From contig NW_025766043.1 of NCBI RefSeq assembly GCF_003918875.1, forward strand, positions 1 to 64,000: 64,000 nt of DNA. Reading direction: 5' to 3'. Shown here piece after piece: positions 27,728 to 64,000 of this stretch; position 1 is the stretch's first letter; the number at the start of each line of letters is the position of its first letter. This stretch comes from Haliotis rubra (lineage: Eukaryota). A program made the position numbers and the translations under genes. The notes beneath the pieces were generated by a model. The model did no database searches. It saw only the letters and a program-made list of their open reading frames with translations, and had not been told where the DNA came from.

Positions 27728-28492
27728 CAGGTAATGAAATAATGGAATGTAACATAAACAATATAAAAATAAGTTTCTATGTCACCACCTTTAAAAGCTA
27801 TATATCCTGTTAAGTAGAGATATATCGATGATTATTATGACCCACATATCTATGTGTGACAATTATCTCAACAGCAGGGGTATCTCAGGTAGAGTTCATG
27901 CCTTAATTGTTGACAATGTGTTGACAAACTAAAGGTTGTGACACAAACACTTAATGGATGACAATTTTGTGTTATGGCATATAAAAAAATATTTTAAAAA
28001 TTGTGAAAAAAATATTTCAGTCTGCACAAAATTTCTTTTGGTAAAGTGATTTGAATAACAATATTCTTTCGCAACAGAGATGTTTTACTTGTTTGGTTGC
28101 CATTTAAGAAATATTCTGTGCATATTTATTCTATAAATGGTCACATCTAACATTTTTTACAAACTGATATATTTAATATACAATTCATTGAGAGCTTTGT
28201 GCTGGCATGTTTGAACATTACCAACATTTCATTATTCAGACAGGCTAAGACTTAGTAGGAATGTTTACACAACCTCAATTTGAAATATTTGTTCATCAAG
28301 ATATCTGAAAAACATAACAAATATTATTGACCAAGCAAACTAATAGTAGAGTTTAAGTTCACTAGAGTTATGTCCCCTGATACTTGCGATTTCATGCAAG
28401 AACATTTACTTGAAATGCCAACATAAAACCTTCAGCTTCACAAATTTGAACACATTATCTATACAGTCTGACCTGTATTAGACTGGTGGTTA

Positions 28493-28650
28493 CTACAACA
28501 GGCCATCTTCCATAGTGCAGTCTGTGCGCATCTTCCCATCGCTGCACACACAAATATACCTGGCATCATCAGTCTCCATGGTGACACAGGTGGTACCCCG
28601 AGGACAAGGACTATTCCTGCAAGGGTTTGTGGGACGGGAACATCCTGGTT
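28493..28650 (-). CDS. FN3-array gene, terminal exon: EGF-like domain then stop
   Basis: Not in the ORF track in this frame. tcttcag acceptor, phase 1: EPGCSRPTNPCRNSPCPRGTTCVTMETDDARYICVCSDGKMRTDCTMEDGLL*. C-x4-C-x5-C-x10-C-x-C-x8-C spacing is EGF-like. Confidence 0.8.
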
Positions 28651-29256
28651 CTGAAGATACAGAGATATATTCCTACAGAACGTGGTCCTGCCAGTCACAC
28701 ACTGGGAAAATTCCAGGTCAGCTGTGCTTGTTTCCTAGAAATGTTATATTTGACAGCAATATTTGAGCTAAATGATGCCAGCAATATTTTAGCTATTGAT
28801 GAGCTATATGTTGCCGACCAAACAAACCTAGTACTGTATATTGAGAAATAGTCTGACAGGACCAAACAAATAAGATAAGAAGATAAACTTTATTGTCCTG
28901 CAAGGGAAATTTGTTTTGCATTCAAAGAGCCAATACAAGCATATAACAACAAATAATTTAAAGTATATATACACAATGCCAAGCTAATCAGAATATAATG
29001 TTGAATTATAACATAACCAAAGTTCGTGATATAATAATCACTTGTGCCTCATCATAGATTTCACTATTACAATTTTGGAGGAAGATTTAGAAGTTTTATA
29101 CTGTATGGACAAATGATTTTGAAGTTCTATTAGTTTTGTAATACATGATTTTGAAACGGCGGCCAGAAGGCAGAAGTTCATAACATTCATTTAAAAAGTG
29201 TGATGGATCCAATTGATTTCATTTCAGAAATGTAGGCCATCCGGTCCATAATTCAC

Positions 29257-29348
29257 CAGTCTAAGTAAACTTAGTCTCAGTACTATTCGTTACACTCCTC
29301 AGTATAGTAGGGTAACAAATAATACTGAGGCTAAGTTTACTTAGACTG
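29257..29348. mobile_element. 92-bp palindromic MITE with 9-bp TSD (Mutator-like)
   Basis: TIR cagtctaagtaaacttag...ctaagtttacttagactg; ataattcac at 29248-29256 and 29349-29357. Confidence 0.85.
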
Positions 29349-29628
29349 ATAATTCACATACATAGTCCTTTAATATACTTGACAGAGTACCTCATTATAT
29401 AAATTATGACATGTGACAATATTTGATAGATTTACCAACAACATTTAAATATGCTTACATGATACATTTAAATCAAATACAATTGTTTTCAATCCAGTTT
29501 TGTCTTAATTTAAAACTGCAAAATATGAAAGCTCCTAACTGCGGCCAGAAGGCAGAAGTTCATAACATTCATTTAAAAAGTGTGATGGATCCAATTGAAT
29601 GGCCAGAGCTTTCTTCTTAACTTTTGAC

Positions 29629-29897
29629 CACGGCTCGATTTAAGAGATGTTGACCTACTTGCACCGGGTGCAACCTAAGATAAAAACCTAGTTGCACCAG
29701 CCAAATTCTAATCGCACTGCTTCTATTGCAATATGTAATGAAAGAAATATGCTATTGAACTATTTAGATGTTTTATTCACAAGTTTACCCACTCACAAAT
29801 TGACCTGCACCTGGTGCAAATTAGACTAATAACTAGGTTGCACTTTGTAATATTTGCTAGCACCAGTGCAAGTAACAAAGCACTAAATCAAGCCCTG
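29629..29897. mobile_element. hAT-like MITE inserted in the LINE ORF
   Basis: TIR cacggctcgattta / taaatcaagccctg; flanks share tttgac; internal tgcacc(a/t)g repeats. The LINE reading frame resumes across it (QYES|KVKKKALAIQLDP). Confidence 0.7.
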
Positions 29898-30866
29898 TTT
29901 GACTCATACTGAAAAGGTAGAGGTTCGAAATTGAAGCCACAAATTTTGCTTGAGATGTTTACAATTTTGTCAAGTTTGTTTTTCTGTGTAAGAGGAAGAT
30001 TGCCATACCAGGCATGAAAGCAGAAAGTTAAAATACTATTAATGAATGTTTGGTAGAATAATTTTAAGATATTAGTGTCTACATAAAATGATCGCAATTT
30101 TCACAGAAAGAAAAGCCTCTGTTGTGCTTTCCTATATACAGGATGCGAATTTGATTTCCATGAAAGTTTATTATCAATGATAGTACCCAGATATTTATAC
30201 TCTTCTACTGTTTCTACTTCCTGTCCATCAATACAAACAGGTTTCAGTTTATTTTTTCCACTTCGGAAGTCAATTATAATTTCCTTTGGGTTTTTTATGT
30301 TCAGGGAGAGGTAATTGTCTTTGCACCATGAAGTAAACGCATCAATATTTTTCCTATACTCTAACTCTGATTGACAAATAAACCCAACCAAAACGGCATC
30401 ATCAGCAAATTTGAAATTCAGACAGGTGGATAAATGAGATATACAGTCATTTGTATAGAGTGTGAAGAGGACAGGGGACAGGACACAGCCTTGAGGAGCA
30501 CCAGTACTCGCAAGATTAACGTCAGTCACCAAGGCTGATCTATTGATCATCAAATCAGCTCCTACGACAACCTATGTCCCTGGGGAACCATTCTAACCCA
30601 TAATACACATGGCGGCAGTATGCTTGTTGGTCATCACAGCTGACTGACGGAGGACATGGCTGCTTTCATGTCATCACATACTGAAGGCATACAGAGTGAC
30701 ATGCACACGTGTGCACACTTGTCTGCAGGCTTGATACTGCTAGCCGACAGAGACAGCACATAGCATGCTATGATGGATACCCCATATCTGTACCCACTCT
30801 TAGCTGACCAGACATAGTTTGATTCCCTTTTGTGCAGAGTTCCATGCAGGATTACAAGTATGACAT

Positions 30867-30960
30867 ACCGTATATGACCGTCTATAAGCCGAATTTTGAG
30901 GACCAAAAAAAGCCGTCTGTAGAAGGGGGTCGTCTTATCCATGAGTTACACTTTCGTCAA
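30867..30960. mobile_element. Possible pogo/Tc1-mariner terminal fragment
   Basis: ta|ccgtatatgaccgtctataagccg...ggtcgtcttat resembles CCGTA-type termini; no partner end found. Confidence 0.35.
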
Positions 30961-31341
30961 ACTTTTTTCCAGGGGTAAGAAAACAACATCGTATCACTCC
31001 GCGTGAACAAACAACAGAAGACGACTTTGTCAGTAGAGACGTCAAATTTGCAATTAAACATCACTAGACAAGATTAATTACCATTTAAGTTACAAGTTGT
31101 TTTTGCTGGGCATTGTTTTATTTGCAGGGATTAAGATTACCGTGCGTATTTGTCTCGTACACAAAGCCGGAAATAGCAATCAGCTGTGCACACGTTTCCC
31201 GGCGAACAAGTTCAAACATGCACAATAATATAACGGGATGAATTCTATTGATTGAATACTATTATTTAACCCAAAGAAATATATCCTAGCATTGTGTAAT
31301 AGTTTTTATGTAAAAACTATATAATCAACACTAAGGTTATA

Positions 31342-33239
31342 CCAGGGATACTCTACAACAGGGATAGGTCACTCGCTTGCTTTCTTTACCATTTGTACTA
31401 ATTAACGTGTGCCTCGTCATGCTCCAACGCACACAGTGACTTGGTTCGGTCCCAGCGCAACTTCGGCTGCGTTTAACAGTACTTCAGCCAGTGTATTGTA
31501 TAGGTCGGAATTTTACAATGAATGAATGAATTAATTAAGAGCAAGAATTTTATGTGAATGAATGAAAGAAATTAAGAAAAAGAACAAAAGAAAAAGAACA
31601 TATGTGAATGAACGAAAGAATAAATGATACACCACGGCCATCTCTCCCCAAACATGTTAAAGAACGCAAAACTATCGGTAGAACACATGTTAACATCAGC
31701 TGTCCTTTTTATAAAAAATCTACTTTGAGACATTTTTTTACATTAGTAACTAATTCAGATATCTTATTGCATGTGTGGAATGACATGGGCATTGACAGAA
31801 TGTTAACTGACACTGTCACAGACCCCTCAAGAACAGAAAGTTTAGAACTATCACAAAGCCTTGCAAACACCTTTCCAGTTTTGTCAAATACTAAGATCAA
31901 CAAAAGAAAGAAAGAAGTTTTAGAACTATAACACTCAAGCATTACAAGCACCAATGGTATCAGAACAGATCGTGATATGTCATATTTTCACACACCTCAA
32001 ATACACACTAACAAAAAAAACAAAAAAACTATCACTATTACTTGCAAAAACTTTCACCTGATGGTATATTCCCTCATAAAAATTAAAGGTGTTTGTGAAA
32101 GATGTTTTAGAACAATAACTAGAAACACTCAAACAGCGCCCTGTAGTATTTCAATGGCAGATCGTGATATGTCATATTTTTCACACACCTCAAATACACA
32201 CTAACAATTTTTTTAAATTATAAAACTATTACTATTACTTGCAAACACCTTTCACCTGATGGTATATTCCCTTATAAAAATTGAAGGTGTATGTGAAAGA
32301 TGTTTTGAACTCTAACTAGAAACACTCAAAAAGCCCTGTAGTATTTCAATGGCAGATCGTGATATGTCATATTTTTACACACCTCAAATACACACTAACA
32401 ATTTTTTTTTAAATTATAAAACTATCACTATTACTTGCAAACACCTTTCACCTGATGGTATATTCCCCTCATAAAAATTGAAGGTGTATGTGAAAGATGT
32501 TTTGAACACTAACTAGAAACACTCAAACATAGCCCTGGAGTATTTCAATGGCAGATCGGCGATATGTCATATTTTTACACACCTCAAATACACACTAACA
32601 AATTTTTTTAAATGATAAAACTATAACTATTACTTGCAAACACCTTTCACCTGATGGTATATTCCCCTCATAAAATTGAAGGTGTATGTGAAAGATGTTT
32701 TTGAACACTAACTAGAAACACTCAAACAGCCCTGTAGTATTTCAATGGCAGATCGTGATATGTCATATTTTCACACACCTCAAATACACCCTAACAAAAA
32801 TTTTTAGTTATAAAAATATCACTATTACTTGCAAACACCTTTTAACTAAAGGTATATTTCCCTTCTAAAAATTAAGCGAATATGTGAAAGAAGTTTTAGC
32901 GATATAATTTAGTCTTTCTTCGCTGTGTACTGAGAATTGAAGCCAGTGAGCTACAACATGCCCACTTGAAACTTTACTACAAAGCTACTGTACTTATACT
33001 GACACTAATAACAAGTATTTGACTTAAAATGAAGTGACAGAATAGGTAACTTATCTTCTACGTGTAGGTTTTCAGTTGTCACAACACTCAGCGTATGTAA
33101 TCAGCTGTTGAAAATAAACCGGGCTCAATCTTAAAAACCACGCTGCCGCCATATTGGCTGCACTGGTCACGTGACGAGCCGAGGCATAGCTTAGCAGCTT
33201 TCCGAAGAGTGACCACTCCCCCTTATAGAGTCTCCCTGG
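31342..33239. mobile_element. 1.9-kb non-autonomous TIR element with 5-bp TSD carrying a tandem array
   Basis: TIR ccagggatactctacaa / ttatagagtctccctgg (15/17, extendable to ~33 bp); ttata at 31337-31341 and 33240-33244. Confidence 0.72.
31966..32900. repeat. ~196-bp tandem repeat, ~5 copies
   Basis: gatcgtgatatgtcatatttt recurs at ~31968, 32160, 32356, 32554 and 32751. Confidence 0.92.
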
Positions 33240-33467
33240 TTATACGGACCATCATGAACGTGGTAAGCACGTGACATGGAACGAGGCGGTAATGTCATTT
33301 GGTATGAGGCCACCTGGGATTGCTAAAGTCATACACAGAAACACACAAAGACACAGACAGAATCACAGACAGACAGATGCATGCACAAACACACATACAT
33401 TTTACATAATGTAAATTTCTCTCTGAATATAACAGTACATATTCTTAACATGACGTAGCTGGCTCAC

Positions 33468-33674
33468 CTGTGCATCCTGTTTCAGAGACAGTGTACTTGA
33501 CGACCTTTGACATCTGACCAAATCCCTTCCTGTTTCGTGCCTGCACCTTGATGTAGTATCGTGTGTCCGGGGTCAGGTCCTTGATGACGACGGACAGACG
33601 ATCCCCCCCAACCCCCTCCATCACCCAGTCTTGCGTCTCTGCATCCTCTGTCGCTGTGTAGTACACCAGGTACC
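33468..33674 (-). CDS. FN3-array gene exon: second half of DCC/neogenin FN6-like domain (copy 3)
   Basis: GYLVYYTATEDAETQDWVMEGVGGDRLSVVIKDLTPDTRYYIKVQARNRKGFGQMS; AG/GT, 207 nt, phase 1/1. Confidence 0.9.
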
Positions 33675-34035
33675 CTGGAGCAACAGTTGCCATGGTAACT
33701 CAACATGGTAACAAAAGGGCATCATATAAAACCCTAAAAATAACTGCAGCTGCAGTTTCCATGGATGCAGATTACATAGACAATGGAATATTATGTTGAA
33801 CACCTGGTGTCCTCTAGCATCACAGTTGCCATGGTGATATAGCTTGATGCAGGGTCATCCAACAGATGACATTCTTATCTTGTCGTGTTGTTAACAGGGT
33901 TAAGATTTTCGGTCATGTGGACAAGGTGTCCAACCTTGGATCTGGAGGCCTGTGGTTCGAATTCCATCACTAGACTCAGTTATAAACACTTACAGTTTAA
34001 GGAATAGTGTATAACTTGTGGTACAGTTGACTTAC

Positions 34036-34146
34036 CTGTAATTAAACCATTAGTCTTGGCTGGTGGCTGCCAGGTGACGATGGCAGTGCCATAGTTGCTG
34101 CCTGAGACTGCTGTCACGGTAACGTCCTCCGGTGGACCCCCAGGTG
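34036..34146 (-). CDS. FN3-array gene exon: first half of FN6-like domain (copy 3)
   Basis: APGGPPEDVTVTAVSGSNYGTAIVTWQPPAKTNGLIT; 111 nt, AG/GT. Confidence 0.88.
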
Positions 34147-34736
34147 CTACAACAGCCGTTCAGTATGTAAACATTGTACTGTGACATTATTACCCACATG
34201 TCATGTGATGGTACCATCTGATTGGAAATTGGACAGGTAAAATTACTCGTGAAAAATATTTTAAAAAAACCCATTCTTCTTTTGTGTAGTATATACACAC
34301 GTTCAACACACGGACAGCCTACAAAATGTGTCTGTAAGTCAAATCCCTTTAATAAAACGTTCATCACTACAATTGCATACAAATTGCTCTATGATCTTTG
34401 TTAGTCTGATGGAAAAGTCATATATGTGAAAAGTTAAGGACACTATAAAGATTTATTATTTTTTTTGCAATAATTTAACTTAAAATCACACCATTTACAT
34501 AACTGTGTTAAATATGTTTTAGTAAGTGATTGAAATTATGCTTTAAAGAAGGAATTCCAATAATTGTTTTTAGATTTGCATGAAGAATTCAGGATTCAAC
34601 AAAGTTAGATTTCTACTTTGCATTTGAAATTCAGGGGATGTCGACAAACTCAAGGATGGACATTTGAATCTGCATACTCACAATACCTGCTGCAAATATA
34701 TATACCGTAAATACTGGAAATATATGCCATAACTAC

Positions 34737-35073
34737 CTGCTTCTTTAGTCTTGACTGCAAGTGTCATGCTCCATGGACTGTGCTCGCCATACTGAACCGA
34801 CATGACTGACATCTCATACTCCGTGTTGGCCTCGAGGTCCATGATCACAACGAACGGGTCATGAACAGATAGGTTCTTAAAGCGGGAGTCCAGAGAAGGT
34901 TTTACACTCTTGTACCGGACAATGTACTCAACGTCTTCATGTGAGTGTCCTTTCTTGTGAGTGTCTTTCCAGGTGAGAAGTGCTGATTCAGCAGTAATCT
35001 TGCGGGCCTTCAGACCTACTGGGGGTAACTCGTTGTACGAAGCTCTCGTCTCCCGGTGAGCAGATTACATCCC
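34737..35073 (-). CDS. FN3-array gene exon: DCC/neogenin FN5-like domain (copy 2), one frameshift
   Basis: PPVGLKARKITAESALLTWKD...YIVRYKS...DLEANTEYEMSVMSVQYGEHSPWSMTLAVKTKEA; 337 nt, indel probably at or near the G5 run at 35021-35025. Confidence 0.85.
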
Positions 35074-35602
35074 CTATAAAAGACAGTTGGATAAAACCTG
35101 TATGAAGATCAGGGTCAGGTGATTTAGCTTGCTGGATCATGCAAGTCATCATATGCCATACATCTATGCCCATGATGTCAGTCTCTAGATTACCTTGTCT
35201 AAAGTGAATCTCAAGTGACACCTACTTCCCTCACTTCATGACACAACCCTGTATGGAGTTTAAATGCACACGATCCAGGACCCTGAACATGAATTATTAA
35301 AGGGGGCTCATACAGTTGTGTATTTGTTTCTTCGCTCAATCACAAATGAAACATGAAAAAAATTATGAATACTATTGAATATATTGAAAATATTTTTAAA
35401 ATGAGATGATTGACCTTCCATCCACTGTATTAAAGATATAATGTCTGGCAGTATACAATGAACGTTTGAGACAATTCCTAACTTATGTGGGAAAATAGAT
35501 ACTTGTAGCACTGTATCAGGAAATATATGCTGCAGACTACGATTAGTGTCAAGCAATAGACTACAGTTAGTTCATAATCACAGCAGAGTTGGTGTGAAAT
35601 AC

Positions 35603-35800
35603 CTGTGCCAGATGTTCTGACCATGGATGAGCGAGATAGAGGTCCGTACCCCTCCTCATTTCGTGCTTGTATCTTGAAGAAGTACTTGGTGCAGGGAGTG
35701 AGGTCAGTGATGGTGGAGGTCAGAGTGTCGCCCAGCACGGCCTCCAACACCCATTCCCGCTCCGGCTTGGTATCATCCGTGGAGTAGTAGATCAGGTAGC
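35603..35800 (-). CDS. FN3-array gene exon: second half of FN6-like domain (copy 2)
   Basis: GYLIYYSTDDTKPEREWVLEAVLGDTLTSTITDLTPCTKYFFKIQARNEEGYGPLS; 198 nt, AG/GT. Confidence 0.9.
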
Positions 35801-35824
35801 CTACAATGGAGGTATGTTGTGTGA

Positions 35825-36905
35825 GATAACCACAACCATCTCTCTGATAACACCACAACCATCTCTCTGAAAATGGCCGGAATCATTTCTCTGACAACAC
35901 AAAAACCATCTCTCTGATAACACCACAACCATCGCTCTGAAAATGCCGAAATCATTTCTCTGACAACACAAAAAACATCTCTCTGATAACACCACAACCA
36001 TCGCTCTGACAACACAAAAACCATCGCTCTGACAATGCCACAACCATCGCTCTGAAAATGCCAGAATCATTTCTCTGACAACACAAACACCATCCCTCTG
36101 ATAACACCACAACCATCGCTCTGACAACACCACAACCATCTCTCTGAAAATGCCAGAATCATTTCTCTGACAACACAAACACCATCCCTCTGACAAGACA
36201 ACAACCATCTCTCTGACAACTCTCTGACAACACCACAACCATCTCTCTGACAACACAACAACCATCTCTCTGACAACTCTCTGACAACACCACAACCATC
36301 GCTCTGACAACACCACAACCATCGCTCTGAAAATACCGGAATCATTTCTCTGACAACACCACAACCATCTCTCTGATAACACCACAACCATCGCTCTGAC
36401 AACTCTCTGACAACACCACAACCATCTCTCTGACAAGACAACAACCATCTCTCTGACAACTCTCTGACAACACCACAACCATCGCTCTGACCACAACCAT
36501 CTCTATGACAACACCACAACCATCGCTCTGACAACACCACAACCATCTCTCTGACAACACCACAACTATCTCTCTGACAACCCCACAACCATCTCTCTGA
36601 TTACAACACAACCATCTCTCTGATAACACTACAACCATCACTCTAACAACACCACAACCATCGATCTGAACATGCCGGAATCATTTCTCTGACAACACAA
36701 AAACCATCCCTCTGATAACACAACAACCATCTCTCTGACAACACCACAACCATCTCTCTGACAACACCACAGCCATATCTCTGACAACACCACAACCATC
36801 TCTCTGACAACACTACAACCATCTCTCTGACAACACTACAACCATCTCTCTGACAACACTACAACCATCTCTCTGACAACACCACAACCATCTCTCTGAC
36901 AAAAC
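35825..36905. repeat. 23-bp minisatellite with higher-order variants
   Basis: Unit ctgacaacaccacaaccatctct, interleaved with aaaatgccagaatcattt variants. Confidence 0.92.
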
Positions 36906-37328
36906 TATAAGACACAGCTCTGACAATACTGGAATATGTTGGCCTTACAAAAAGAGATTACAGACATTCACAGGGGTTGTTTCCCTTCTTATCACCAGGA
37001 TCTGCTGCTCAAGACTTTAAATCCCTGGTTTGCTATACCGGTGTTTGTTGCATTCTCAACAGTAGTACACTTCAGTGTCCTGTATCACTTTGCTTTTCTC
37101 ACACAAACATCATATCATACCTGACGCACCTGCAGTACCCACAAAAGCACCATCCTAGCAATCATATCTGAACAGCTGAAACTTTATGAAGCAACTCTAC
37201 TGCCTGACAAATAGAGTGATAACTTGTGGAGTTACACTGTGTTTCCTTAACAACTTATTTCACTGCTGCAATGATTCTGGTAATACTGATATGGATGGAC
37301 TTGCACCACCCTTTGTTACTATAATTAC

Positions 37329-37436
37329 CTGTAATGACGCCATTAGGAATGGCTGGAGGTTGCCAGTTGATCAGAGCAGTGTCACCTTTGTCATCTGCTA
37401 CTGTCACGGTGATGTCTGCTGGTGCAGTACCTGGAG
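37329..37436 (-). CDS. FN3-array gene exon: first half of FN6-like domain (copy 2)
   Basis: APGTAPADITVTVADDKGDTALINWQPPAIPNGVIT; 108 nt, AG/GT. Confidence 0.88.
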
Positions 37437-37755
37437 CTGCGGACCAAACAACAACTTGATTAATCCAGCACTGTACCTAGAGGTGCGGACCAAACAACAA
37501 CTTGATTAATCCAGCACTGTACCTAGAGGTGCGGACCAAACAACAACTTGATTAATCCAGCACTGTACCTAGAGGTGGGGACCAAACAACAACTTGATTA
37601 ATCCAGCACTGTACCTAGAGCTGCGGACCAAACAACAACTTGATTAATCCAGCACTGTACCTAGAGGTGCGGACCAAACAACAACTTGATTAATCCAGCA
37701 CTGTACCTAGAGGTGCGGACCAAACAACAACTTGATTAATCCAGCACTGTACCTG
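37437..37755. repeat. 46-bp minisatellite, 7 copies, overlapping a splice acceptor
   Basis: ggaccaaacaacaacttgattaatccagcactgtacctagaggtgc at 37441, 37487, 37533 ... 37717. Confidence 0.95.
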
Positions 37756-37778
37756 GATGTAACATTTAGTCCCCACTG

Positions 37779-37935
37779 AGGTAGCCTAGTGGTTAAAGCG
37801 TTCGCTCATTACACCAAAGACCCGGGTTCGAATCCCCACATAGGCACAATGTGTGAAGCCCATTTCTGGTATTCCCCGCCGTGATACTGCTGGAATATTG
37901 CTAAAGGCGGTGTACTACTAAACTCACTCACTCAC
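37779..37935 (+). mobile_element. tRNA-derived SINE family A
   Basis: Box A/B and (ACTC)n tail. Confidence 0.88.
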
Positions 37936-38024
37936 TGACAATGAACATGAAATGTTATTACTGGAGCTTCCTGGAAAAATATAGAAAGCCTTTCATGTAC
38001 GGACCAAGAACTGTTAAACATTAC

Positions 38025-38222
38025 CTGCTGCCGAGGTGGTGAAAGCAACAACATTAGAGAATGGTCCATAACCCTTCCTGTTCCGAGCCTGCACCTTGAA
38101 GTAATTCGTCTGCTCTGGCTTCACACTGTTCAGGCGGGTCGACAGATCTTCACCTTGCACCTGCATGACTGTCCAATCTCTGTTGTCCCATGTCTTGTTA
38201 GTGGCGTAGAGAATCGTGTAGC
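38025..38222 (-). CDS. FN3-array gene exon: second half of FN6-like domain (copy 1)
   Basis: GYTILYATNKTWDNRDWTVMQVQGEDLSTRLNSVKPEQTNYFKVQARNRKGYGPFSNVVAFTT; 198 nt, AG/GT. Confidence 0.9.
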
Positions 38223-38650
38223 CTGAGTGTGTAAACATTTTGGGTCTTACATCACATGACGATGTATTTTCTGACCAGTAATTTGCCCAGATATGATCAA
38301 TGTCTTATATATCTAGAATATCTGAACAAAATTTCAACACATACCACATATCAACATCCAGCTCTTCAGAAAAGAAGAGGTCTGTCATGCGATCAGAGGT
38401 TTTACATACAAGGGCTATATGGATGCAAACAGTGTTCAATAAATTTGTGTAACCATGGTAACATGGATTAAAGAACTTAAGTACTCCATCTGTAAACTCT
38501 GGCTGATCATCTCTCTTTTTCATGTATAATTATTGGATTATGTTGCCATGGCTACATACATGAAAGCTGCAACAAAGGCATAAATATATGTCTACACCGT
38601 TTTTGTAAACCCATTCAAACAAAGATACTATATGATGCAGACGGACGTAC

Positions 38651-38752
38651 CCGTGATGACTCCATTAGCCTGTGTTGGGGGCTGCCAATTGATGGCAATG
38701 GAGTCCTGTGTGTCGCTGAGAACAGTCAGGTCCGTTGGTGGCGTGGCAGGTG
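38651..38752 (-). CDS. FN3-array gene exon: first half of FN6-like domain (copy 1)
   Basis: APATPPTDLTVLSDTQDSIAINWQPPTQANGVIT; 102 nt, AG/GT. Confidence 0.88.
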
Positions 38753-38951
38753 CTATAAGAATTGAATTTTCATCCAAAACAAAATCTCCCAAGAGCTATC
38801 ACTACAATAATTGCATCAAAATGCTTGCAGACAAGTCACCTCATTGGTTACCATGACATCACAATCAAATGACATCACTAATCTTTCTTCCACTAAAGCT
38901 GGTAAGCACAACTTTCTATACTCTTGACACAGATTTACTGTTTGCAAACTA

Positions 38952-54200: not shown

Positions 54201-57200
54201 ATGAGCTATATTGAATTGATTGTTGATTTGGTTTTTGGCGTAAATTCCGGCACCTAGGCGGTCGCAGACGAACGACCCGGCGTAAATAGATCTGGCATGA
54301 CCGGGCTGTTGATGACCGAGATAAATTACCGGATGGATTCGAACTACGTTTGGTTATGAGGCCAATGATGACACCGGACGTCGCGGTAGTAGCGAACGGT
54401 TACTGACTATACGATGCGACGGTGACGGTAATGGTCGAAATACGGTATTTTGTTGAAGGGCCAGTTCCTTTTGGTGACACAATGCGTGTTGACAATGCCC
54501 TTCTGAAAGGTGGAAGCCGCCCCTGAGTGGTGATTGGTGCGTAGCAGCAGCAATGTTACGGCATTGTCGCGGTGGTGCCCTGAGACTCGCGTTCTTCGTG
54601 ACCGGGAACGATATTGCTATTCCCGTTTTGATGCAGAGCATTTGGGCGAACGGGCGTCGAAATATTCTGCATGGAATCACGGGCGTGGTAAACCAATACA
54701 TCTTGCTGGTTTGAGTGATGATTGACGTGTTTTTATGCGGCTTTGACATTCCGGCGGCTTATCGCGACGAACGCAAGTGAATGGGCTACGGTTGATGCGG
54801 TATTGGCAAATTGTTGTTGATTTATCGGCTGTGGAGACGCGAATGTTGATGACACATGGAAATCGGCTAATAACGGAAACCGAGGTCATTCATCTGACAA
54901 ACTGTTCCACGACTGTTCCGACGACTGATCGAATGATATATTGCGTCCGTGTCACCGGCTGTTGAATATTGATGCATTTGTCGTTGATCGGCATGTCACG
55001 GTGAATTAAGCGTTTGTTCATCGGAAATCAGATCGACTTTCAACGAAAGTGTTTTCGGTTCAATGACGAAATCGTATTAACTGGCGCAGTATCGGCGTGT
55101 AACGTTATAACCTATTTATTGAGTTGGCTTCGTCTTGCTGTTTGTTATGCGTTACTCCCCGGTCATGGTAGCTTCGGGTGGGCTGGCAACAGTTTGCAAA
55201 CGGTAGTCTGTTGTCTGGGTATGAAGTTGGTAACACCGACTTGGTGGAAGATGTCATTTGTTATTGATGAACTGATATACTGGCCCGTACGATGCGACCG
55301 GTGATGCCGGAGATTTTGTTTTGGATGGCGGTGCTTATAACGCCTGCCCGCGCCGCCCGGCGGAACTTCGACTGTTCTCGGCGTTGCAATCCCGTGCCGT
55401 CGATGGCGACTATTTTACGGGCTAATGAATAAATCGCGTGCGTCGTTGCGTCTGTCTTTGTTTGGTGAATTAGCGACGTGGTGTTTTCGATGACTTTTCG
55501 GCAACATAATCAATGGTGCTGCGTGAAAGATGACCGAGGACTTACGGTATAAGTTGTGATCATCGGTGCCATCGATTTTATATTTTATTGAACTTTGTTT
55601 GCATCCGTAACCGCTTGTATACGATATGTTGAACACTCTTCTTTCTGGAAGCTTCGGATGTTGATATATTGTTGTCGTGTTGATTTTATGTTCGAGGTAT
55701 TCTGAATATGAATTGATCATGTCTGGAAAAATTACTGGTCGAAGCCATGGTCATGGTAAAGACGAATGTTGCCTGGTACGCATTCATGTAGTACGTGAAC
55801 GAAGATTGGCGGTCATGCGAATTATCAGGTAATCTGAACCATACGGTAGAATATTAACTTCCAGAACGACATCGAATGCGAATAGGAACGAGAAGGAGTT
55901 ATGAACCGTTATCAATGTTGTTGCTTTCGCCACCAGGCGACGAATGTTTAACGGTTCTTGATCGTACATCGAACTTTCTCATTTTTCCGGAAACTCCGAT
56001 GGCATTTCATCGTTCGACCCGATGGAAGAATAATTATTTATTACTGCCGTAGCAGCAATGTTCAGCTATGACGACCGAAATGAGCTTCGCACATTGTGCT
56101 ACAATGAGGATTCGAACCGATTAACGGTGTTGCTAATTTACCGATGAGGAACTTAATCGATTACGTCCGAGTACGGTCGCTGAATTGATCGAAGTTGTTG
56201 TTTGATCGCGCCTCTAGTACGGTCGCTGAATTATCGGAAGTTATTGTTTGATCGCGCCTCACGATTAACGGATTAATCGAAGTTATTGTTTGATCGCGGC
56301 TTTCAGTGCTAGTTAATCGAAGTTGACCCGTTGATCCCCGCCTACAGGTAACAGTTATTCAGTTGTTGTTTGGTCGCCTCAGGTACGATTAACAGTTAAT
56401 CGGATGACCCGTTTGATCGCGCCCTCTGAGTACGGTCTTTAGTTTGTCGCGGCTCTCAGTACTGCGGCGAACGTCGCGTGACGGCGAATTGTTTAGTGAC
56501 CTTCTTCTGAACTGAAACGACACTCGGCCATTCTAATGGCGTCGTTACAGGTAACGAAAGAGATGATCATCCTGTCATTACCAGGATCGTTTTGGTCAAT
56601 GAAGTTGTTGCAGTCAACTCCGCAGTTATCGCGCTCTATTTGTCGGGCATTGGTGCTTCATGGTTTCGGCTTGTTCGAACGTTGCTAGGATGAACAACTT
56701 TGGGGCGCACAGGTTATGGGCATGATGTTTGATATTGATGAGGCTACCCGCTGATGTTGCTTACTGACATTAAACAGGCGATTTAGCGAACTGTGCGAAT
56801 GTTAATGAAAACGTACGTGATGTCTGTGATATCGCCAGACTGACATATTCGTGTTGTCGAGCCAATGTCTTGTCGAAGACTCGGTTATTGATGATTGTTG
56901 TATGGTCGAAGATGATTCAGTGTTGATGATTTATTAGTATTGTCGAAGATATTTGGTATTGTTGTCGAGGAACATAATAGCTGTGTGTTGAAGATGATAT
57001 TGTTGTCGGGTATTTGTTAATCGGTTTATTGTCGAAAATGATTCGTCGAAGCGTGTTGTGTTAAATTGATGATTTAACGGTATCGAAAATGATTGTGTGA
57101 ACCAATTTATTGATGAAGGCTGATATTGTAATGGAAAGATGATTTGTCCGAAGCGATATTCTGTTGTCGAGTTGTCGAAGATGTTATGCTTGTCGAAGAA

Positions 57201-60200
57201 GATGGTTATTATTGTTGTCGAAGAGACCGTCGAAAGAATGATAGAGAACGTATTCGTTGATCGAAGAAATGTTCGACGTGTTGTGTTATCGGCGACTGTT
57301 GTATTCGATTGATCGAAGGACGATCGTGATGATGATAATGTTGTATTGTTGTCGAAGACTGATCGAAGATGATTTGTTATGCTGTCGAGAGGACTGTTTG
57401 TGTTGATAAAATGTTCTGTCATTTCGGATTCGGTTGTATTGTTGTCGAAGCTAAACGCATTTCGAAGCGACCGGTATTGACATTGTCGAAGGCGATGATT
57501 TTGGTTGTCCGGCGATGACTAACGTTGTCGAAAATGATTTAGGCATTTTCAAGCGTGTTATCGAGAGATGATTTTATTGTTGTCGAAGGATTCATTGGAA
57601 TTTTCGAGAGAAGATTCGGTTATTAATGTTATCGAAGAGATGGTTGGTTATCTCACGCAACCTTCCTCATTGTAACTTACCTGATCTACTACTCGGTCGA
57701 TACGACGTTGGCGTGCTGGCTGACCTCACCATCACTGACATACTTCACTACGCAATACTTCTTCAGATACTGGCTTTGCGCAATGAAAGGAGAATATACC
57801 GACAAATCGAGTCGACATCTGGCTTTAGTATTCCGCACCAGCTCTGCTAACCGATATGTTTTCGCCGGTCTTAACGACGCCAATAAATGATCTTACGGCT
57901 GATGCAATGCTACTAATGTCGAAGATTCGTGCTGCCGAACGATATAACGATGGAGATAAATCATCTTCATTTTAAAAATGTTTCAATATATTCAATGACA
58001 TTCATAATTTTTTAAATGTTTCATTTATTGATTGGCGGTACGCGGCAATGACTTTAACTGGTCGTGATGTTGTAAATGTACGGACGTGTCGTAATTGAGA
58101 ACTATTCGCGAATTCACTTTGAACAGGCGGCCTCTGGACTGACGTCGTGAATGGTATGACGCTGTGACGTGATCCGGCGAAGCTAATCTTGACGATCTTC
58201 ATGGGAACTCGGCTTCTTGTCTTTATGAGGATAATCTTATGCGACTGGTGCAACGGCGCGATGAATGGGGCCATGGTGGCAGTCCGCTTCTCGCCTGAAG
58301 ACTGCTCGCGAAAGGACGCTACGTGAAGGCGTTGATTACTGTCGGTACAGGTGTAAAACGCTCTCTGAATCGCTTTAAGTGTCTGTTCATGACAGTTCGT
58401 TGAGCATGGACACCGAAGTAACGCGATGAATGTCGGTCGTTCGACGAGCATGACTTTGCAGTCAGACTAAAGAAGCCGTGGTGTATCAGCCATTCGATGC
58501 TGCGGCGGGCGGTGATGACAATAGCAATTCGAAGTAATCGTCGCCCGGTTTGTGGGCGATCCCCACGAATTTCGGAAATACGAAAATACCGGTGCTAAAC
58601 GATCTGAAATGGTGTGGAGGCTAAGCAAGCATAATTTTGTCCTTACTAAAACATGTTGTACCGGTTATGAAATGGTGTGATTACCCAGGTTGATACGACG
58701 AAATATTAAATCTTTGCTCGAACGTCATAACTTTTCGCATGCTCGACTTTTTCATCGAACTGGCTGCCGTAGGCGAACTGGCAGCTGCGGTATTGTTGAC
58801 GTTTTAATGAGGGACGTTTGAACGCATTTGTGAAATGTCATGATTGAGCGTCAACGCTGTACACCAAGAAGAATGGTTTCAAAATATTTTCGCGGTACCG
58901 ATAAATTCCAATCGAATATTTCATCGTGGTGTCTGACCTGTCGATGCATGCCTGAGCGACCGATTTTCGGGGTATCACCGGGCATTAAACGACGACGGTC
59001 TCGGGCGACGACTCGGCTTTGCCAAATAGTCACCGAACTAATGATTTGGTACAGGTGGTCAACTGTGCCACCAAGTTATACGCTGTTCATGAAGTAACGG
59101 TGTTTATGGCTTTGAGTCACCGGTATTGATGAATTCTGGTGGGTTGAACGCCTTGTCACGTGACGAATCTTAACCTGATTATTTAACGCGTTTTGTAGAA
59201 TGTCGTCTGTTGGATGACTACCGCATCAGCTTTATATCGCCATGGCTGTGGATGAAGACGCCGGTCGTTCGGCAACTATTCCATTGTCTGTAATCTGCGT
59301 CGAGCGGCTGCGGACATTTTGGGGTTTATGTGATAGCGTTACCGTAGTTGATTACCGTAACGGCAACCGAGGAGCACTGATTGATACCACGGCGTGGAGA
59401 TGCGGGCATGAACTGGTGATGGAAGAGTTGGTAACTCTGTCGTCATCTTTGACCCGACGCCGCGATACTACGTCGGGTGGGAGCGCGAGCAGAGGAGATT
59501 TCGGTCGGTGTCGAATAGTCAGCTACGCGATATGCAGGATATGCGAATTGACCGGCTGCGTCGTCGTTAAAATGTTTGTTATGACCGAGAGGAGAAATTT
59601 ACATTATGCTGGAAATGGCGTATTCGGGCTGATGCATGCATCTGTCTGATATAGGTGTTTCTGTGTGTGACAACTTGATCCCAGTGACCTCGCTTTAGTG
59701 ACGTGCATATAGTTCCGTAATCGCGTTAACGCCATTGGAACGTTGGTCGCTCTTCGGCCTGGCTTCGCGCCGATATCGCGTGTTCAGTACGTAATAATAA
59801 CGTCAGCGTCGGACTGGAATGACCCGTTTACCTAAACGGCTGTTATGGGCCCGGTGTTGTTGTTTCCCGTAGAAGATAAGTTACCCTGTTCTGTCGCTTC
59901 GTTTAGTCGGAAATACTTGTTGATAGTAGTACGGTAGCTTTGTAAACAGTTTCGAGAATGGTATTGTCAGCTCACTGGCTCATTCTCGGTACACAGCGGC
60001 TTTAGAGCCATATGTACTTCTTTCCGCATATTGGTTGGTACAGAATATACTGGCGAATGAATTTTACGTAATGGTGATATTTTATAACTGAAAATTTTTT
60101 GTTGGTCTTGTTGGTATTGTGAAAATATGACATATGCGCCCGATCTAGGAAGACAGATTATTCCGAAGCATCTTTCACATACGCTCCAATCCTGCCATCG

Positions 60201-63200
60201 AGTGGTGTTTACCGAAACCAACGGACCTGGATTTTATCATTTAAAGATTTGTTGATATTGTTTGAAGATTATTAACAAATATGACATATAGCCGATCTGC
60301 CGTTAATGCTCCAGGCGTTGGTGTTTCACAATGATTCAAAACATCTTTCACGCGCCTACATTTTTGTATTCATCGGGTGAATACCTGGCTCGGTAATGAA
60401 TAGTTTATTTGAAAATTGACCAGTCCGGTGTCAATAAAATATGATATCGTAATCTGTGAAGCTGGTCGTTTCTGGATGAAGTTCAAGCATCTTTCGCCGC
60501 CTTCATTTTATGAGAATATGCAAATCGAGGTAATTCGTTGTGTCTAATAACAGTTTTGATTTAAAGAAAATTGTTAATTTGGTATTATTGAAGCGCGAAC
60601 ATTATGCGCCGTTATTACTGAGGCGTTGTTGGTGTTTCAGATATTGTTCAAAACAAACGCCTTTGATTTTGTGAGGGAGAACTATACCGTCGAATGATTT
60701 TTGCAATCAATGATGATAGTTTTGTTTTTGTTGATCAGATGATATTAACCATGAACATCGCCGATCTGTTTAACGATAAGCCATTATTAACTTCAACGAT
60801 GTTATGATTCTGAAAACTTCTTTCTTGTTCCGATCTTGACGACAAGGTGGAAAGGTGTTTTCTGAAACTTTAATGATGATTCTAAACTTTCTGTTCTTGA
60901 GGGGTCTGTGTTTGATCGTCTGACTTCTGTCCTGCCCATCAATCATTCCGCACGTACCAATAAAATATGCGAATTGGTTACTAATAATATAGCGGTACGC
61001 AAAGGACGGCTGATGTTAACATACTGCAGTTTTGGTTCAATGTTTGAGGAGGAAGATGACGTGTTGGCTCATTTATTCTTCTTTGTTCTTTCTTGAACAA
61101 CTTCGTTCGTTAAAATTGTATTCAATTGGAATTCATTCGGAAATTCGATCTCACGCGTACTTGTTAGCGCGGCGAACGATTCTGTGGGTGAAACGGCGGC
61201 GTCGTGTGGCGTGATTCAACTGTTGTGGTATCTGATTTATTGGCTGCTGGTGTTGATTATGGTGCGTAAAACTGTGCTGTCTTTAGGTTCTTTCTTTGGG
61301 TTAAAATTCAACCAGTATTCGATCGATAGAATTCGTCGTCCTATTCGACGGTGCGTGTTTGAACTTGTTGAAGCGATGATAACGCAACGATTGTGCCGGT
61401 TTTCAAATGCGCGCGGTGTCTTCTGCAGGCAACGAAACTGACTTATGACTTTAAATGACGGTGATGTTTGATACCCAGGTGGCGTGCTCGCGACGAGGAA
61501 TGAGTCTTCTGTTGTTGTTCGCGGCAATCTGATGCGTGTTCGTTTTCTTGCCCTGGAAAGTTTGACGGTAACTCGTAGGCGACTGCACGGGCGACAAGAG
61601 CATAAACGGATAATGCGACATGTCATCACTATGATACGTGAACTTCTGAGAGATGTCGCGGTAAATTGAACGCATGGTGTCAATCGGCAATACCGTGGGC
61701 TGGCGGCCGCGAACGAAGTGTGCTGATGTGCGTGATGACGTAACGACCGTAATCGTCGGTCGACAACGACACCAACTGCTTCCTGCGCATCGTATTATCG
61801 GGTTGAGAATATTACGAGACATAGATTTGTCGTGGAGCTTCGATTTGATGATCAATAGTCGGCCTTGTTGACTGGCGTTAATCTTCAGGTACTGGTGCTT
61901 TCCTCAGATGATCTCTTCACGCTGTACTGAAATGGGCTGTTATGTCTCGTTTATCCACCTGTCTGAATTTCAGGGCCCCGCTTTGTTCGTTCAAGTTTTG
62001 ATTTGGGTTGTTGTCGATCAGGATGGTAACCAAATGATGATGGTTCGTGATTGAAATTACCCTGTCACGAACATGAAATTATAGTGCGACTTCGAGATGA
62101 GCTGAAGCGACTTGTTTATTCGATGGACGAAATGAAACAATGAAGGTAGACCTTATCGTTATTAATAAACTTCGTGAAGTCAAATTAGCATCTATCAGAA
62201 GCGCGGCAGAAGACTTTTCTTTCTGTGAAATTAACGTCATTATGTGAACATAATGTAAGATATTCTGCCAAACGTTCATTAATAATGTTTAACTTTCGCT
62301 TTCATGCCTGTTTATCAACGATCTTCACTCTTTACCGAAGATGATATTGGAACCTCCACCTTCGGTATAGTCCAGGCTGAGCTTGATTTGGTCTTTGTTG
62401 TTAACTAATATTACAAAGTGCGACACCGGTTATTAGTCTGGTACCGGGTGCTGGAGCTCGACGAATAAACATCTAGTTCAATAACGCTATTTCTTTCATT
62501 ACATATTGCGGTAAACGATCTTGATTAGGTTTATCTTGGGTTGCGCCGATCTGAGTCGGCATCTTCATCGACGTCAAAGGATGAAGAAAGCTCTGGCCGT
62601 TAAACGGATCCATCACCTTTAAATGAATGTTATGTTCTTCTTCTGGCCCTCTGATTAGAGAGCTTTCATCATTTGCGGTTTTTAAGTGAAGACAAAACTG
62701 GTTGGCTGTTATTGTTTGTTTGAAATGATAAATGGCTTTATGTTTAAGCTGTTGTTGTCAAATCTATCATCAATGCGTAGTCATAGTAATTCTTTCTATC
62801 GGTATTAAGGACGTATTCGTATTGAATTAATCGGTCTGAGTGAAGCTTCGGCGCCGGTTTTGTTTGCCCTGCCGCTACTGAGAGTCAATAACGATAATTT
62901 TCGAGACAAGTTGCCAGACTGTTGATTATGGACGTTGAAAGATATTGGATCCATACGCTTTTAAATGAATGTTATGAACTAGCGGCTCTGACGTTCAAAT
63001 CATTTTTAAAGCTATTGAACTTCGAAATCGTTGTCATACGGTAAAATCTTCATCGAAGAACAACGATAATCATGGTGAACAAAGTGATTGACCATGACGG
63101 TTATGTTCCCTTCGGCATTATATTACGATTGGCATTGTCATATACTTTGGAAGTTGACTTTGTTCGTTATATTCAACGTGATGATATTTGAATGCGAACA

Positions 63201-64000
63201 AATTTCCTTGCGGAGACGATGAAGTTTGTCTTCGCGGTTCGGGCTTTCTGACCATTGCTACGGGTTGACGACATGTGGCTCAGTATTGGCACGACGTCGT
63301 TGGCTTTCAGATATTTAACGTCAGTATGACGTTTCAGGAGAACAACGGGTTTTCCCGGTCGACTGGCGAGGACCAGTTCGCAATGGGGTATGTCGAGACA
63401 GTGTTGGATCCCCTGAAACCGGGAACCAGTCGCTGATCTGGGGTGCCGCCTGCGGAAGACTGACGACCGAGGTACTGTTGGTGCGGCGATAATTGCGCTA
63501 ACGTTGTGTCAACCGCCGGTCAATGGTCGGACTGACTATTATTCGTTCCAGGCTGATGACCATCGGGGGTCTGATGAACTTGACTCTGCTGACCGGTTTG
63601 GCGGTCGGCAATGTTTGTTGTGTTTTCGTTAACGGTGAACTGTTTCAGGTGGTTGTCGAGCATTCACTGCAGGGGTGGCCTGATAAATTGATGAGAATCG
63701 TTGTTGTGTTCAGGCATGCCGACACCTGGCTCTCGATGATTGTAAATAACTTGTCGGTTTTGTGAAATGTTGAACAACCGTTTGCCAGAATAGTATGCGC
63801 GGAATGTTTCAACTGAAGTAACGACAGAGCTTAATGAGCAATGTGAAAAATCTTATTCGAATCGCTTTACCGAAGAGGCTTTTTGTGCGGTTCGAAGGCC
63901 TGCAATTTTTAAAGGCTGACGCATATTATGCATGGCGGGTGATCGTCCGTAGTGTTTGATGATGCGGCAACGACGCGATGCTGGTCGGGCATGGTCACGG
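48290..64000 (-). other. Corrupted inverted copy of ~27,900-48,250 (probable long-read fold-back artefact)
   Basis: Exact reverse-complement anchors in colinear order: 47955-47965/48482-48492, 47890-47910/48530-48550, 35782-35798/57678-57694, 31817-31847/60880-60910 (31/31), 29728-29749/62488-62509. Blurred mirrors of the 69-bp (~49,900-51,640), 46-bp (~56,165-56,460), 23-bp (~56,870-57,650) and 196-bp (~60,060-60,770) arrays. Confidence 0.93.

What the first reader, a model, noticed from the sequence alone, without database searches (positions are those of the whole stretch)
27900..64000. Giant fold-back centred at ~48,270: the last 15.7 kb is a blurred mirror image of the preceding ~20 kb
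Seen: colinear reverse-complement anchors throughout (see feature). About 18.2 kb of the left arm (47,900 to 29,740) maps to about 14.0 kb of the right arm (48,540 to 62,500), a ratio of ~0.77, so errors are deletion-dominated. Exons, introns, young SINEs and near-perfect minisatellites are all degraded alike, and there is essentially no spacer. Young homogeneous repeats present in both arms cannot be reconciled with ancient divergence. Inference: a nanopore template-complement (hairpin/fold-back) read whose second strand was poorly base-called was assembled unpolished. The real sequence upstream of the FN3 gene is therefore absent, and any gene calls beyond ~48.3 kb are spurious.
Basis: partly seen in the sequence, partly recalled or inferred. 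Interest (0 to 1): 0.7.

Follow-up and report, generated by a model that had tools for sequence, protein, structure and literature searches.

The report
Unpolished nanopore fold-back read artefact
The last third of this small abalone contig is not real genome sequence but a badly base-called reverse-complement re-reading of the DNA just before it, so it is an assembly artefact that should be trimmed and any genes called on it ignored.

Summary
From a turn at 48,326/48,328 (symmetry axis about 48,274), the sequence runs back as a colinear reverse complement of 48,221 to 16,383. This continues through the window end to the contig end at 73,180. Length ratio is 0.78 and identity per alignment column is about 63%.

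- The window is a 73-kb contig (C1153). Its left 47.9 kb is a genuine allelic copy of a 3.3-Mb contig (C2267), with 1.44% symmetric substitutions.
- C2267 continues past the turn with different sequence and no fold-back.
- Contigs assembled from four public runs (Logan's contigs, most likely Illumina data; three samples) cover the left side. They give essentially zero depth over 48,650-52,249 even at 80% likeness.
- The right arm's errors are strand-asymmetric (A>G 910 vs T>C 273). They are dominated by short deletions with geometrically distributed lengths, and homopolymers are compressed.
- Damage is equal in exons, introns, a LINE fragment and arrays.
- Young repeats that match their genome siblings at 94-99% in the left arm match the same siblings at 73-84% in the right arm.

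That assembly used ONT R9.4 reads, including 2D hairpin-kit libraries, with Racon and Pilon polishing and PurgeHaplotigs.

Verdict: not a real feature. The scan noted similar fold-backs elsewhere in this genome.

The parts
16383..48221 (+). Left arm: genuine genomic sequence (allelic haplotig of C2267), the stretch re-read in the right arm
   Evidence: Colinear with C2267:1,257,463-1,305,996 at 93-98.6%. Substitutions 1.44% with a symmetric spectrum. Public-run contigs match it with 0 differences in places (records 6 and 8).
47935..48326 (+). High-copy ~370-bp dispersed element read forward to its end at raw-read quality; the last unpolished piece before the turn
   Evidence: At least 1,836 candidate copies in the genome, all 83-84% identical to this copy. 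Clean copies are 92-99% alike, but this copy is only 82-86% like them.
48222..48327 (.). Turn of the fold-back: single-copy loop or lost start of the return strand; symmetry axis about 48,274
   Evidence: The forward element ends at 48,326. Its reverse complement resumes at 48,328 from element position ~264.
48328..64000 (+). Right arm: blurred reverse complement of the left arm, continuing outside the window to the contig end at 73,180; not real sequence
   Evidence: HSP chain. Zero depth over 48,650-52,249 in 4 runs at 80% likeness. A>G 910 vs T>C 273. No credible Pfam hit on the 10 longest ORFs.
33448..46850 (-). Series of FN3-domain exons of a real gene in the left arm. ORFs at 33,448-33,699; 34,681-35,064; 35,481-35,882; 38,017-38,304; 40,436-40,762; 46,557-46,850.
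   Evidence: Pfam fn3 E 1.7e-8 to 2e-4. Four of the six exceed the gathering score; 38,017-38,304 and 46,557-46,850 fall just below it. Their mirror images are shattered: tblastn gives at best E 6e-4, split over frames.
43580..46220 (+). 69-bp x 38 minisatellite; its mirror at about 49,800-51,900 has lost its periodicity
   Evidence: TRF. Identity at lag 69 is 0.758 on the left. The best lag on the right gives 0.305 against a mean of 0.268.
37427..37754 (+). 46-bp x 7 near-perfect array (97%); its mirror at 56,170-56,375 is barely detectable
   Evidence: TRF. Identity at lag 46 is 0.979 on the left and 0.40 on the right.
47757..47943 (.). Palindromic, MITE-like, very high-copy element just before the turn. 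It explains the one plus-strand HSP.
   Evidence: Plus-strand HSP 48,490-48,586 <-> 47,740-47,834. 'Opposite strands' joints and depths of 10^5 in public-run contigs.

Best explanation
The sequence from about 48,328 to the contig end (73,180) is not genomic sequence. It is the second, poorly base-called half of a single nanopore read that read one strand and then turned onto the complementary strand of the same molecule. The turn may come from a 2D-kit hairpin or from a fold-back molecule in a 1D library.

Inferred mechanism: as the return strand passes the pore it re-zips with the already translocated first strand, moves too fast, and bases are missed or miscalled.

Inferred assembly history: the assembler used this read to extend an allelic contig. 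Racon and Pilon then cleaned the left arm, where other reads map. They could not touch the right arm, because nothing maps to sequence with about 63% identity per alignment column. The contig probably escaped haplotig purging because only about 65% of it aligns to the primary contig.

Shown here: the mirror structure, the absence of short-read support, the single-strand error signature, the normal allelic contig, and the ONT/2D provenance of the matching assembly. Inferred: that one read is responsible, which kit it came from, and why purging failed.
For: Structure: colinear reverse-complement chain to the contig end, ratio 0.78, far above the controls.

Reads: contigs from 4 public runs (3 samples, 2 studies) cover 46,250-48,449. 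Depth is zero over 48,650-52,249 apart from 12x scraps in X1 and under 0.5x in X2, at 80% likeness.

Error signature:
- Per true base, A 0.565 matched vs T 0.724. A>G 910 vs T>C 273 (chi-square 432, p 5e-96) and vs G>A 331.
- Deletion lengths are geometric: 1045/524/271/159/92.
- Indel events are about as frequent as substitutions.
- Homopolymers of 5 or more are called at about half length and are about 3-fold depleted.

Real-divergence control, C1153-left vs C2267: 1.44% substitutions, symmetric spectrum (85/76/69/85), balanced indels. This equals the published heterozygosity of 1.3-1.5%.

Uniform damage: FN3 exons 0.648, intron flanks 0.660, LINE RT 0.645, the rest 0.653.

Young repeats: the same genome loci match the left copy at 94-99% and the right copy at 73-84%.

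Quality step at the turn: forward about 85%, return about 63%.

The allelic contig C2267 has no fold-back, and the right arm does not match its continuation.

Provenance: 1,378,282,171 bp in 2,855 contigs against H. rubra A6 at 1,378,265,264 bp in 2,854 scaffolds. That assembly used ONT R9.4, 14 LSK108 plus 5 LSK208 libraries, Albacore 2.3.3, wtdbg/DBG2OLC/QuickMerge, Racon x2 plus Pilon, and PurgeHaplotigs (PMC6774278).

Known physics: inverted duplicates give missed bases and a shorter low-quality second arm (PMC7229812). The 2D complement strand has lower quality because of re-zipping, and the hairpin adapter is abasic (PMC5770995).
Against: - Read support was tested on only 4 kb of the right arm (48.3-52.2 kb), and with assembled contigs of runs rather than raw reads. 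The tool itself warns that a hole proves nothing.
- No raw nanopore read was seen, so 'a single read' is inferred.
- No hairpin or adapter sequence is visible at the turn, and about 106 nt are unaccounted for there.
- About 63% identity per column is poor even for a complement strand.
- The LSK208 libraries had N50 of 9.5 kb or less. An arm of 32 kb or more fits the long LSK108 libraries better, so the kind of molecule is undecided.
Confidence: 0.92

Rival explanations
1. The fold-back structure is real. In this reading, the haplotype carries a recent, near-perfect palindromic inverted duplication. Only the letters of the second arm are wrong, because nanopores read the second arm of real inverted duplicates badly.
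For: Spealman et al. (PMC7229812) show that real inverted duplications give this read behaviour. Short reads from a perfect palindrome would all map to the clean left arm, so zero depth on the blurred arm does not by itself exclude it.
Against: Allele-specific contigs of run X1 near the turn show the C1153 allele at single-copy depth. At 47,235-47,399 it is 68.0 against 62.7 for the other allele. At 47,445 it is 37.8 against 51.2. Shared sequence is 110-137, which fits 1:1:2 and not the 2:1:3 expected for a palindrome on one haplotype. The arm ends exactly at the contig end, as a read end would. The allelic contig has no such structure. No junction-spanning 'opposite strands' contig was listed at the turn, though 104 joints were not shown.
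Confidence: 0.04
2. The right arm is a real, old or hypermutated inverted segmental duplication that diverged by about 35% in place.
For: Colinear inverted similarity over 25 kb. An earlier follow-up in this scan read another fold-back in this genome as an old real duplication (s1-352091, not tested here).
Against: No short-read contig support. Transposon copies that are 94-99% like their siblings in the left arm are 73-84% like the same siblings in the right arm. The insertions would therefore have to be both younger and older than the duplication. The strand-asymmetric spectrum is impossible for mutations fixed in double-stranded DNA. The indel-to-substitution event ratio is about 1, against 0.4 between real alleles. 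Exons are no better kept than introns. Array periodicity is erased.
Confidence: 0.01
3. The right arm is an assembler mis-join rather than one fold-back molecule. A separate, very poor read from the opposite strand was attached through the palindromic MITE-like element or the high-copy element at 47.8-48.3 kb during DBG2OLC or QuickMerge merging.
For: The turn lies inside high-copy repeats next to a palindromic element. The assembly was a merged meta-assembly.
Against: The mirror starts within about 100 nt of the turn and stays colinear for 25 kb. That would be a coincidence for an independent read. Ordinary Albacore-era raw reads are about 87% accurate (PMC5770995), as is the forward piece here (about 85%). 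The drop to about 63% exactly at the turn is the known behaviour of a covalently linked return strand. Either way the right arm is an artefact.
Confidence: 0.03

Closest known systems
Low-quality second arm of nanopore reads across inverted duplicates (Spealman, Burrell & Gresham 2020, PMC7229812)
   Same: There is an abrupt loss of accuracy right after the inversion junction. The second arm is shorter than the first because bases are missed, and the lengths of the two arms are correlated. Here the ratio is 0.78 and accuracy falls from about 85% to about 63% at the turn.
   Different: In that paper the inverted duplications were real genomic variants. Here allele-specific depth and the allelic contig argue that the fold-back existed only in the sequenced molecule or read.
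ONT 2D chemistry reads (template - abasic hairpin - complement) base-called as one 1D read
   Same: The template and its reverse complement sit in one read. The complement has lower quality because of re-zipping (PMC5770995). Five LSK208 libraries went into the matching assembly and were base-called with Albacore 2.3.3. An abasic hairpin would leave no recognisable letters, and none are seen at the turn.
   Different: Those libraries had read N50 of 9.5 kb or less, while this arm spans at least 32 kb. A fold-back molecule in a long LSK108 library is at least as likely. That Albacore 2.x no longer splits 2D reads is my own recollection and was not checked.
PacBio missed-adapter (SMRTbell) palindromic reads, and palindromic chimeras after whole-genome amplification
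   Same: Both give a read that runs into its own reverse complement and can create inverted-duplicate contig ends.
   Different: Their two arms have equal quality, and PacBio errors are insertion-rich. Here the second arm is much worse and deletion-rich, and the matching project used no PacBio data or amplification.
Unpurged haplotig in a diploid long-read assembly
   Same: The left 47.9 kb is an allelic copy of C2267 with 1.44% divergence, equal to the published heterozygosity.
   Different: It carries a 25-kb false tail. The aligned share falls to about 65%, which probably kept it below the purge threshold. This is an inference from the tool's default of 70%, which I recall from memory.

Membership tests
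Fold-back (template-complement) nanopore read artefact left unpolished in an assembly | The second part is a colinear reverse complement of the first, starting at the turn with no or a tiny spacer | tested here: met
   The chain runs 48,478-73,131 <-> 47,969-16,383 and the loop is at most 106 nt.
Fold-back (template-complement) nanopore read artefact left unpolished in an assembly | The second arm lacks independent read support | tested here: met
   zero depth over 48,650-52,249 in 4 runs at 80% likeness, with the left side covered. Only 4 kb was tested, and with contigs of runs.
Fold-back (template-complement) nanopore read artefact left unpolished in an assembly | Differences have a single-strand sequencing-error signature: strand-asymmetric, deletion-rich, homopolymer-compressing, and blind to function | tested here: met
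Fold-back (template-complement) nanopore read artefact left unpolished in an assembly | The genome was assembled from nanopore reads | tested here: inconclusive
Size and contig count match the H. rubra ONT assembly, differing by 16,907 bp and one record. From memory, 16,907 bp is the size of the H. rubra mitochondrial genome. The record's name is hidden.
Fold-back (template-complement) nanopore read artefact left unpolished in an assembly | One raw read spans the turn, with a drop in Q-score after it | not testable with these tools
   All runs served were assembled contigs, and no raw nanopore reads were available.
Real palindromic inverted duplication | Arm sequence present at doubled copy number on the carrying haplotype | tested here: not met
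   C1153-allele contigs have depth 68.0, 37.8 and 83.6. The alternative-allele contigs at the same sites have 62.7, 51.2 and 138.2. Shared sequence is 110-137. These are k-mer depths of contigs, so the measure is rough.
Real palindromic inverted duplication | A junction and a distal flank supported by independent reads | tested here: inconclusive
   No junction contig was listed at 48.3 kb. However, the junction lies in a high-copy repeat written at raw quality, and the contig ends within the arm.
Old inverted segmental duplication | Strand-symmetric divergence, with insertions younger than the duplication found in one arm only | tested here: not met
   A>G 910 vs T>C 273. Young repeat copies are present in both arms but degraded only in the right arm.

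The most novel reading that the evidence does not exclude
The sequenced abalone really carried, on one haplotype or in some cells, a palindromic inverted duplication of at least 32 kb. It would turn inside a high-copy element upstream of the FN3 gene, and the nanopore merely blurred its second arm.
Probability: 0.04. Interest if true: 0.35.

Novelty: not a real feature. Interest (0 to 1): 0.1.

Why it matters
There is no new biology here, but the result has practical consequences.
- About 25 kb of a public reference contig (48.3-73.2 kb of a 73-kb contig) is false sequence.
- The false tail is rich in spurious open reading frames on the minus strand, which can seed false gene models.
- The rest of the contig is a redundant allele of C2267.
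- The FN3 gene's true upstream region should be read on C2267, where an array of midkine/pleiotrophin-type domain exons lies.
- The same tests can be applied to the other fold-backs noted in this genome, one of which was earlier read as real. The tests are short-read support, the A>G versus T>C asymmetry, deletion excess, and the identity of repeats to their genome siblings.

Tried and rejected
- MAFFT global alignment of the arms and edit-distance-like global alignments were not used for rates. With lenient scoring, random or unrelated sequence already gives 0.50-0.51 identity per column, against 0.57-0.64 for the real pair. Chained BLAST HSPs were used instead.
- One BLAST parameter set was invalid.
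- A fuzzy-regex count of 69-bp units timed out and was replaced by lag autocorrelation.
- A search for microhomology or a short inverted repeat at the turn was inconclusive, because both sides are at raw quality.
- I did not search for ONT adapter or hairpin sequences. I would have had to type them from memory, and the turn leaves no unexplained spacer to hold one.
The prevalence of the artefact is therefore unknown.
Full report
**Observation**

The window has no N. Default blastn of 48,271-64,000 against 1-48,270 gives 19 minus-strand HSPs, 18 of them strictly colinear. They run from 48,530<->47,910 to 63,233<->28,879 at 66-85% identity with many gaps. The single plus-strand HSP is explained by a palindromic MITE-like element at 47,757-47,943.

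With permissive gap costs, nine chained HSPs cover 19,787 of the 24,912 bases after the turn. They span 48,478-73,131 <-> 47,969-16,383 at 62-72% identity per column. The same search covers 274 bases on the plus strand, 0 bases after base-shuffling, and 1,519 bases in scraps after shuffling 50-bp blocks.

**Context**

The window is G000:C1153:1-64000, and the contig is only 73,180 bp long. The mirror therefore continues beyond the window to the contig end.

The left part, 2-47,872, is colinear in the plus orientation with a 3.28-Mb contig, C2267:1,257,463-1,305,996. Identity is 93-98.6%, lowest in tandem arrays.
- Between the two contigs, substitutions are 1.44%.
- The spectrum is symmetric (A>G 85, T>C 76, G>A 69, C>T 85).
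- Indels are balanced.

This equals the heterozygosity published for the matching genome, 1.3-1.5%. Contigs of public runs match the C1153 allele with zero differences in places, next to contigs of another allele at similar depth (records 5, 6 and 8). The left arm is therefore real: it is an unpurged allelic contig.

C2267 continues past the equivalent of the turn with different sequence. It shows only scattered dispersed-repeat matches and no colinear fold-back. The right arm of C1153 does not match that continuation.

**The turn**

Positions 47,935-48,326 are a complete copy of a ~370-bp element with at least 1,836 candidate copies in the genome. All of them are 83-84% identical to this copy. 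Seven genome copies (six fetched plus the copy on C2267) are 92-99% identical to each other, yet only 82-86% identical to this one. The last 400 bp before the turn are thus unpolished, at about the accuracy of an Albacore-era raw read. The published median is 87.6% (PMC5770995).

The reverse complement of the element restarts at 48,328 from element position ~264. Up to ~106 nt (48,222-48,327) is therefore either a single-copy loop or the lost start of the return strand. The symmetry axis lies near 48,274, and no unexplained adapter-sized spacer remains.

Accuracy falls from about 85% to about 63% exactly at the turn.

**Read support**

One search found runs that hold the clean part of the contig. 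X1 and X2 (one sample) hold 0.74-0.75 of the sampled words. X3 is from the same study and X19 from another.

These four runs were laid on 46,250-52,249 at 80% likeness.
- All four cover 46,250-48,449. Unique depth is about 110-137 in X1, with huge depths over repeats.
- All four give zero depth in every bin from 48,650 to 52,249. The only exceptions are scraps of about 12x in three bins of X1 and 0.4x in two bins of X2.

These are contigs of runs, and the tool warns that holes prove nothing.

**Error signature**

Taking the reverse complement of the left arm as truth, the fate of each true base differs by base.

| True base | Matched | Substituted | Deleted |
|---|---|---|---|
| A | 0.565 | 0.183 | 0.251 |
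| T | 0.724 | 0.085 | 0.191 |

- A>G occurs 910 times, against 273 for its strand complement T>C (chi-square 432, p 5e-96). The reverse change G>A occurs 331 times.
- Mutations fixed in double-stranded DNA cannot be this strand-asymmetric. The real allelic comparison in the same region is symmetric.
- Deletion lengths fall off geometrically (1045, 524, 271, 159, 92 ...). Insertions are fewer (502, 127, 31).
- Indel events are about as frequent as substitutions, against 0.4 between the alleles.
- Homopolymers of five or more are called at about half their length. They make up 0.19% of runs in the right arm, against 0.59% in the left.
- The right arm has more G and T than a true mirror would. 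GC skew is +0.125 against +0.073 expected, and AT skew is -0.118 against -0.063.

**Blindness to function and age**

Six minus-strand ORFs in the left arm match Pfam fn3 with E from 1.7e-8 to 2e-4. Four of them exceed the gathering score and two fall just below it.

| Class of left-arm sequence | Match fraction in the right arm |
|---|---|
| FN3 coding parts | 0.648 |
| Intron flanks of those exons | 0.660 |
| LINE reverse-transcriptase fragment | 0.645 |
| Everything else | 0.653 |

- tblastn of the FN3 ORFs against the right arm gives at best E 6e-4, split over frames.
- The ten longest right-arm ORFs have no credible Pfam match. The only hit is below its gathering score, at E 0.008.
- The 46-bp array drops from 0.979 to 0.40 identity at its own lag.
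- The 69-bp x 38 array drops from 0.758 to no significant periodicity.

Dispersed repeats at 29,400-30,200 match named genome loci at 94-99%. Their mirror at 62.1-62.8 kb matches the same loci at 73-84%. An old duplication cannot contain young insertions in both arms that are degraded in only one.

**Provenance**

G000 has 1,378,282,171 bases in 2,855 contigs. The published Haliotis rubra assembly A6 has 1,378,265,264 bp in 2,854 scaffolds (PMC6774278). The difference of 16,907 bp in one record is the size I recall for the mitochondrial genome (own knowledge).

That project used the following:
- MinION R9.4 with 14 LSK108 and five LSK208 libraries;
- Albacore 2.3.3 and Porechop;
- wtdbg and DBG2OLC assemblies merged by QuickMerge;
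- two rounds of Racon and one of Pilon;
- PurgeHaplotigs.

By my recollection LSK208 is the 2D hairpin kit, whose chemistry covalently joins template and complement through an abasic hairpin. The complement was known to read worse because of re-zipping (PMC5770995). Spealman et al. showed that any self-complementary strand is pulled faster once the junction has passed. This gives missed and wrong bases and a shorter second arm, and they compared the effect with 2D chemistry (PMC7229812).

**Mechanism**

One covalently continuous template-turn-complement strand was read as a single read.
- Its template part lies within 16.4-48.3 kb.
- Its complement part was called at about 63% identity per column with about 22% of bases missing.
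- The assembler extended an allelic contig with it.
- Long-read and short-read polishing corrected the unique left arm but could not align anything to the right arm.
- The high-copy element just before the turn also stayed raw, because short reads multi-map there.

The LSK208 libraries had N50 of 9.5 kb or less. A fold-back molecule in one of the long LSK108 libraries is therefore at least as likely as a 2D-kit read, and this stays open.

Only about 65% of the contig aligns to C2267. That is below the 70% default I recall for haplotig purging, which would explain its survival. This point is an inference.

**Rivals**

- *Real recent palindrome blurred by the pore.* This is the only serious rival. 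It is disfavoured by allele-specific depths near the turn: 68.0 vs 62.7 and 37.8 vs 51.2, with shared sequence at 110-137. This fits 1:1:2 and not 2:1:3. The arm also ends at the contig end, and the allelic contig is normal.
- *Old or hypermutated real duplication.* This is excluded by the read data, the strand asymmetry and the repeat-age paradox.
- *Mis-join of a separate bad read.* This remains possible but is still an artefact.

**Verdict**

This is not a real feature. The true upstream region of the FN3 gene is on C2267. The scan has noted similar fold-backs on other DNA of this genome (s1-344926 and s1-352091).

Noticed in passing
L010:3393-3680 and 4135-4554; L017:2642-2881, 4554-4829 and 9714-9983 (all minus strand; C2267:1,308,393-1,334,983): The real sequence upstream of the FN3 exons, on the allelic contig, holds at least five exon-like ORFs. 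Each matches the PTN/MK heparin-binding C-terminal domain (PF01091, E 2e-15 to 5e-6). This could be a tandem array of midkine/pleiotrophin-type domains, possibly part of the same minus-strand gene as the FN3 array.
   Followed up: partly
window:12331-14052 (+): A 574-aa uninterrupted ORF with ankyrin repeats (Pfam Ank_2, E 6e-11). It lies in the part of the contig left of the mirrored stretch.
   Followed up: partly
C2267:1,305,996-1,307,604 versus window:47872-47928: The allelic contig carries about 1.6 kb flanked by 39-bp inverted repeats (92% alike) that is absent from C1153. This is a likely transposon insertion polymorphism between the haplotypes.
   Followed up: partly
window:47757-47943 and 47935-48326: Two very high-copy elements lie side by side. 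One is a palindromic MITE-like element (depths up to 10^5-10^6 in run contigs, with 'opposite strands' joints). The other is a ~370-bp element with at least 1,836 candidate copies that are 92-99% alike, which suggests a young family.
   Followed up: partly
window:48328-64000 and on to 73,180: The false arm has more long ORFs per kb than the real sequence: 64 ORFs of at least 75 aa in 24.9 kb, against 99 in 48.3 kb. Most are on the minus strand, probably because of its G+T excess. It can therefore attract spurious gene predictions.
   Followed up: partly
whole contig C1153 (73,180 bp): Only about 65% of the contig aligns to C2267. The false tail probably kept this haplotig below the purge threshold, so other surviving small contigs of this assembly may carry similar tails.
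   Followed up: no
same genome, other pieces (earlier notes s1-344926 and s1-352091): Two more large fold-backs were noted by the scan in this genome. One was suspected not to be real, and the other was read by a follow-up as an old real inverted duplication. Both deserve the tests used here.
   Followed up: no
window:30104-30571 (-): A LINE-type reverse-transcriptase fragment (Pfam RVT_1, E 1.4e-9) sits inside the FN3 gene region.
   Followed up: partly
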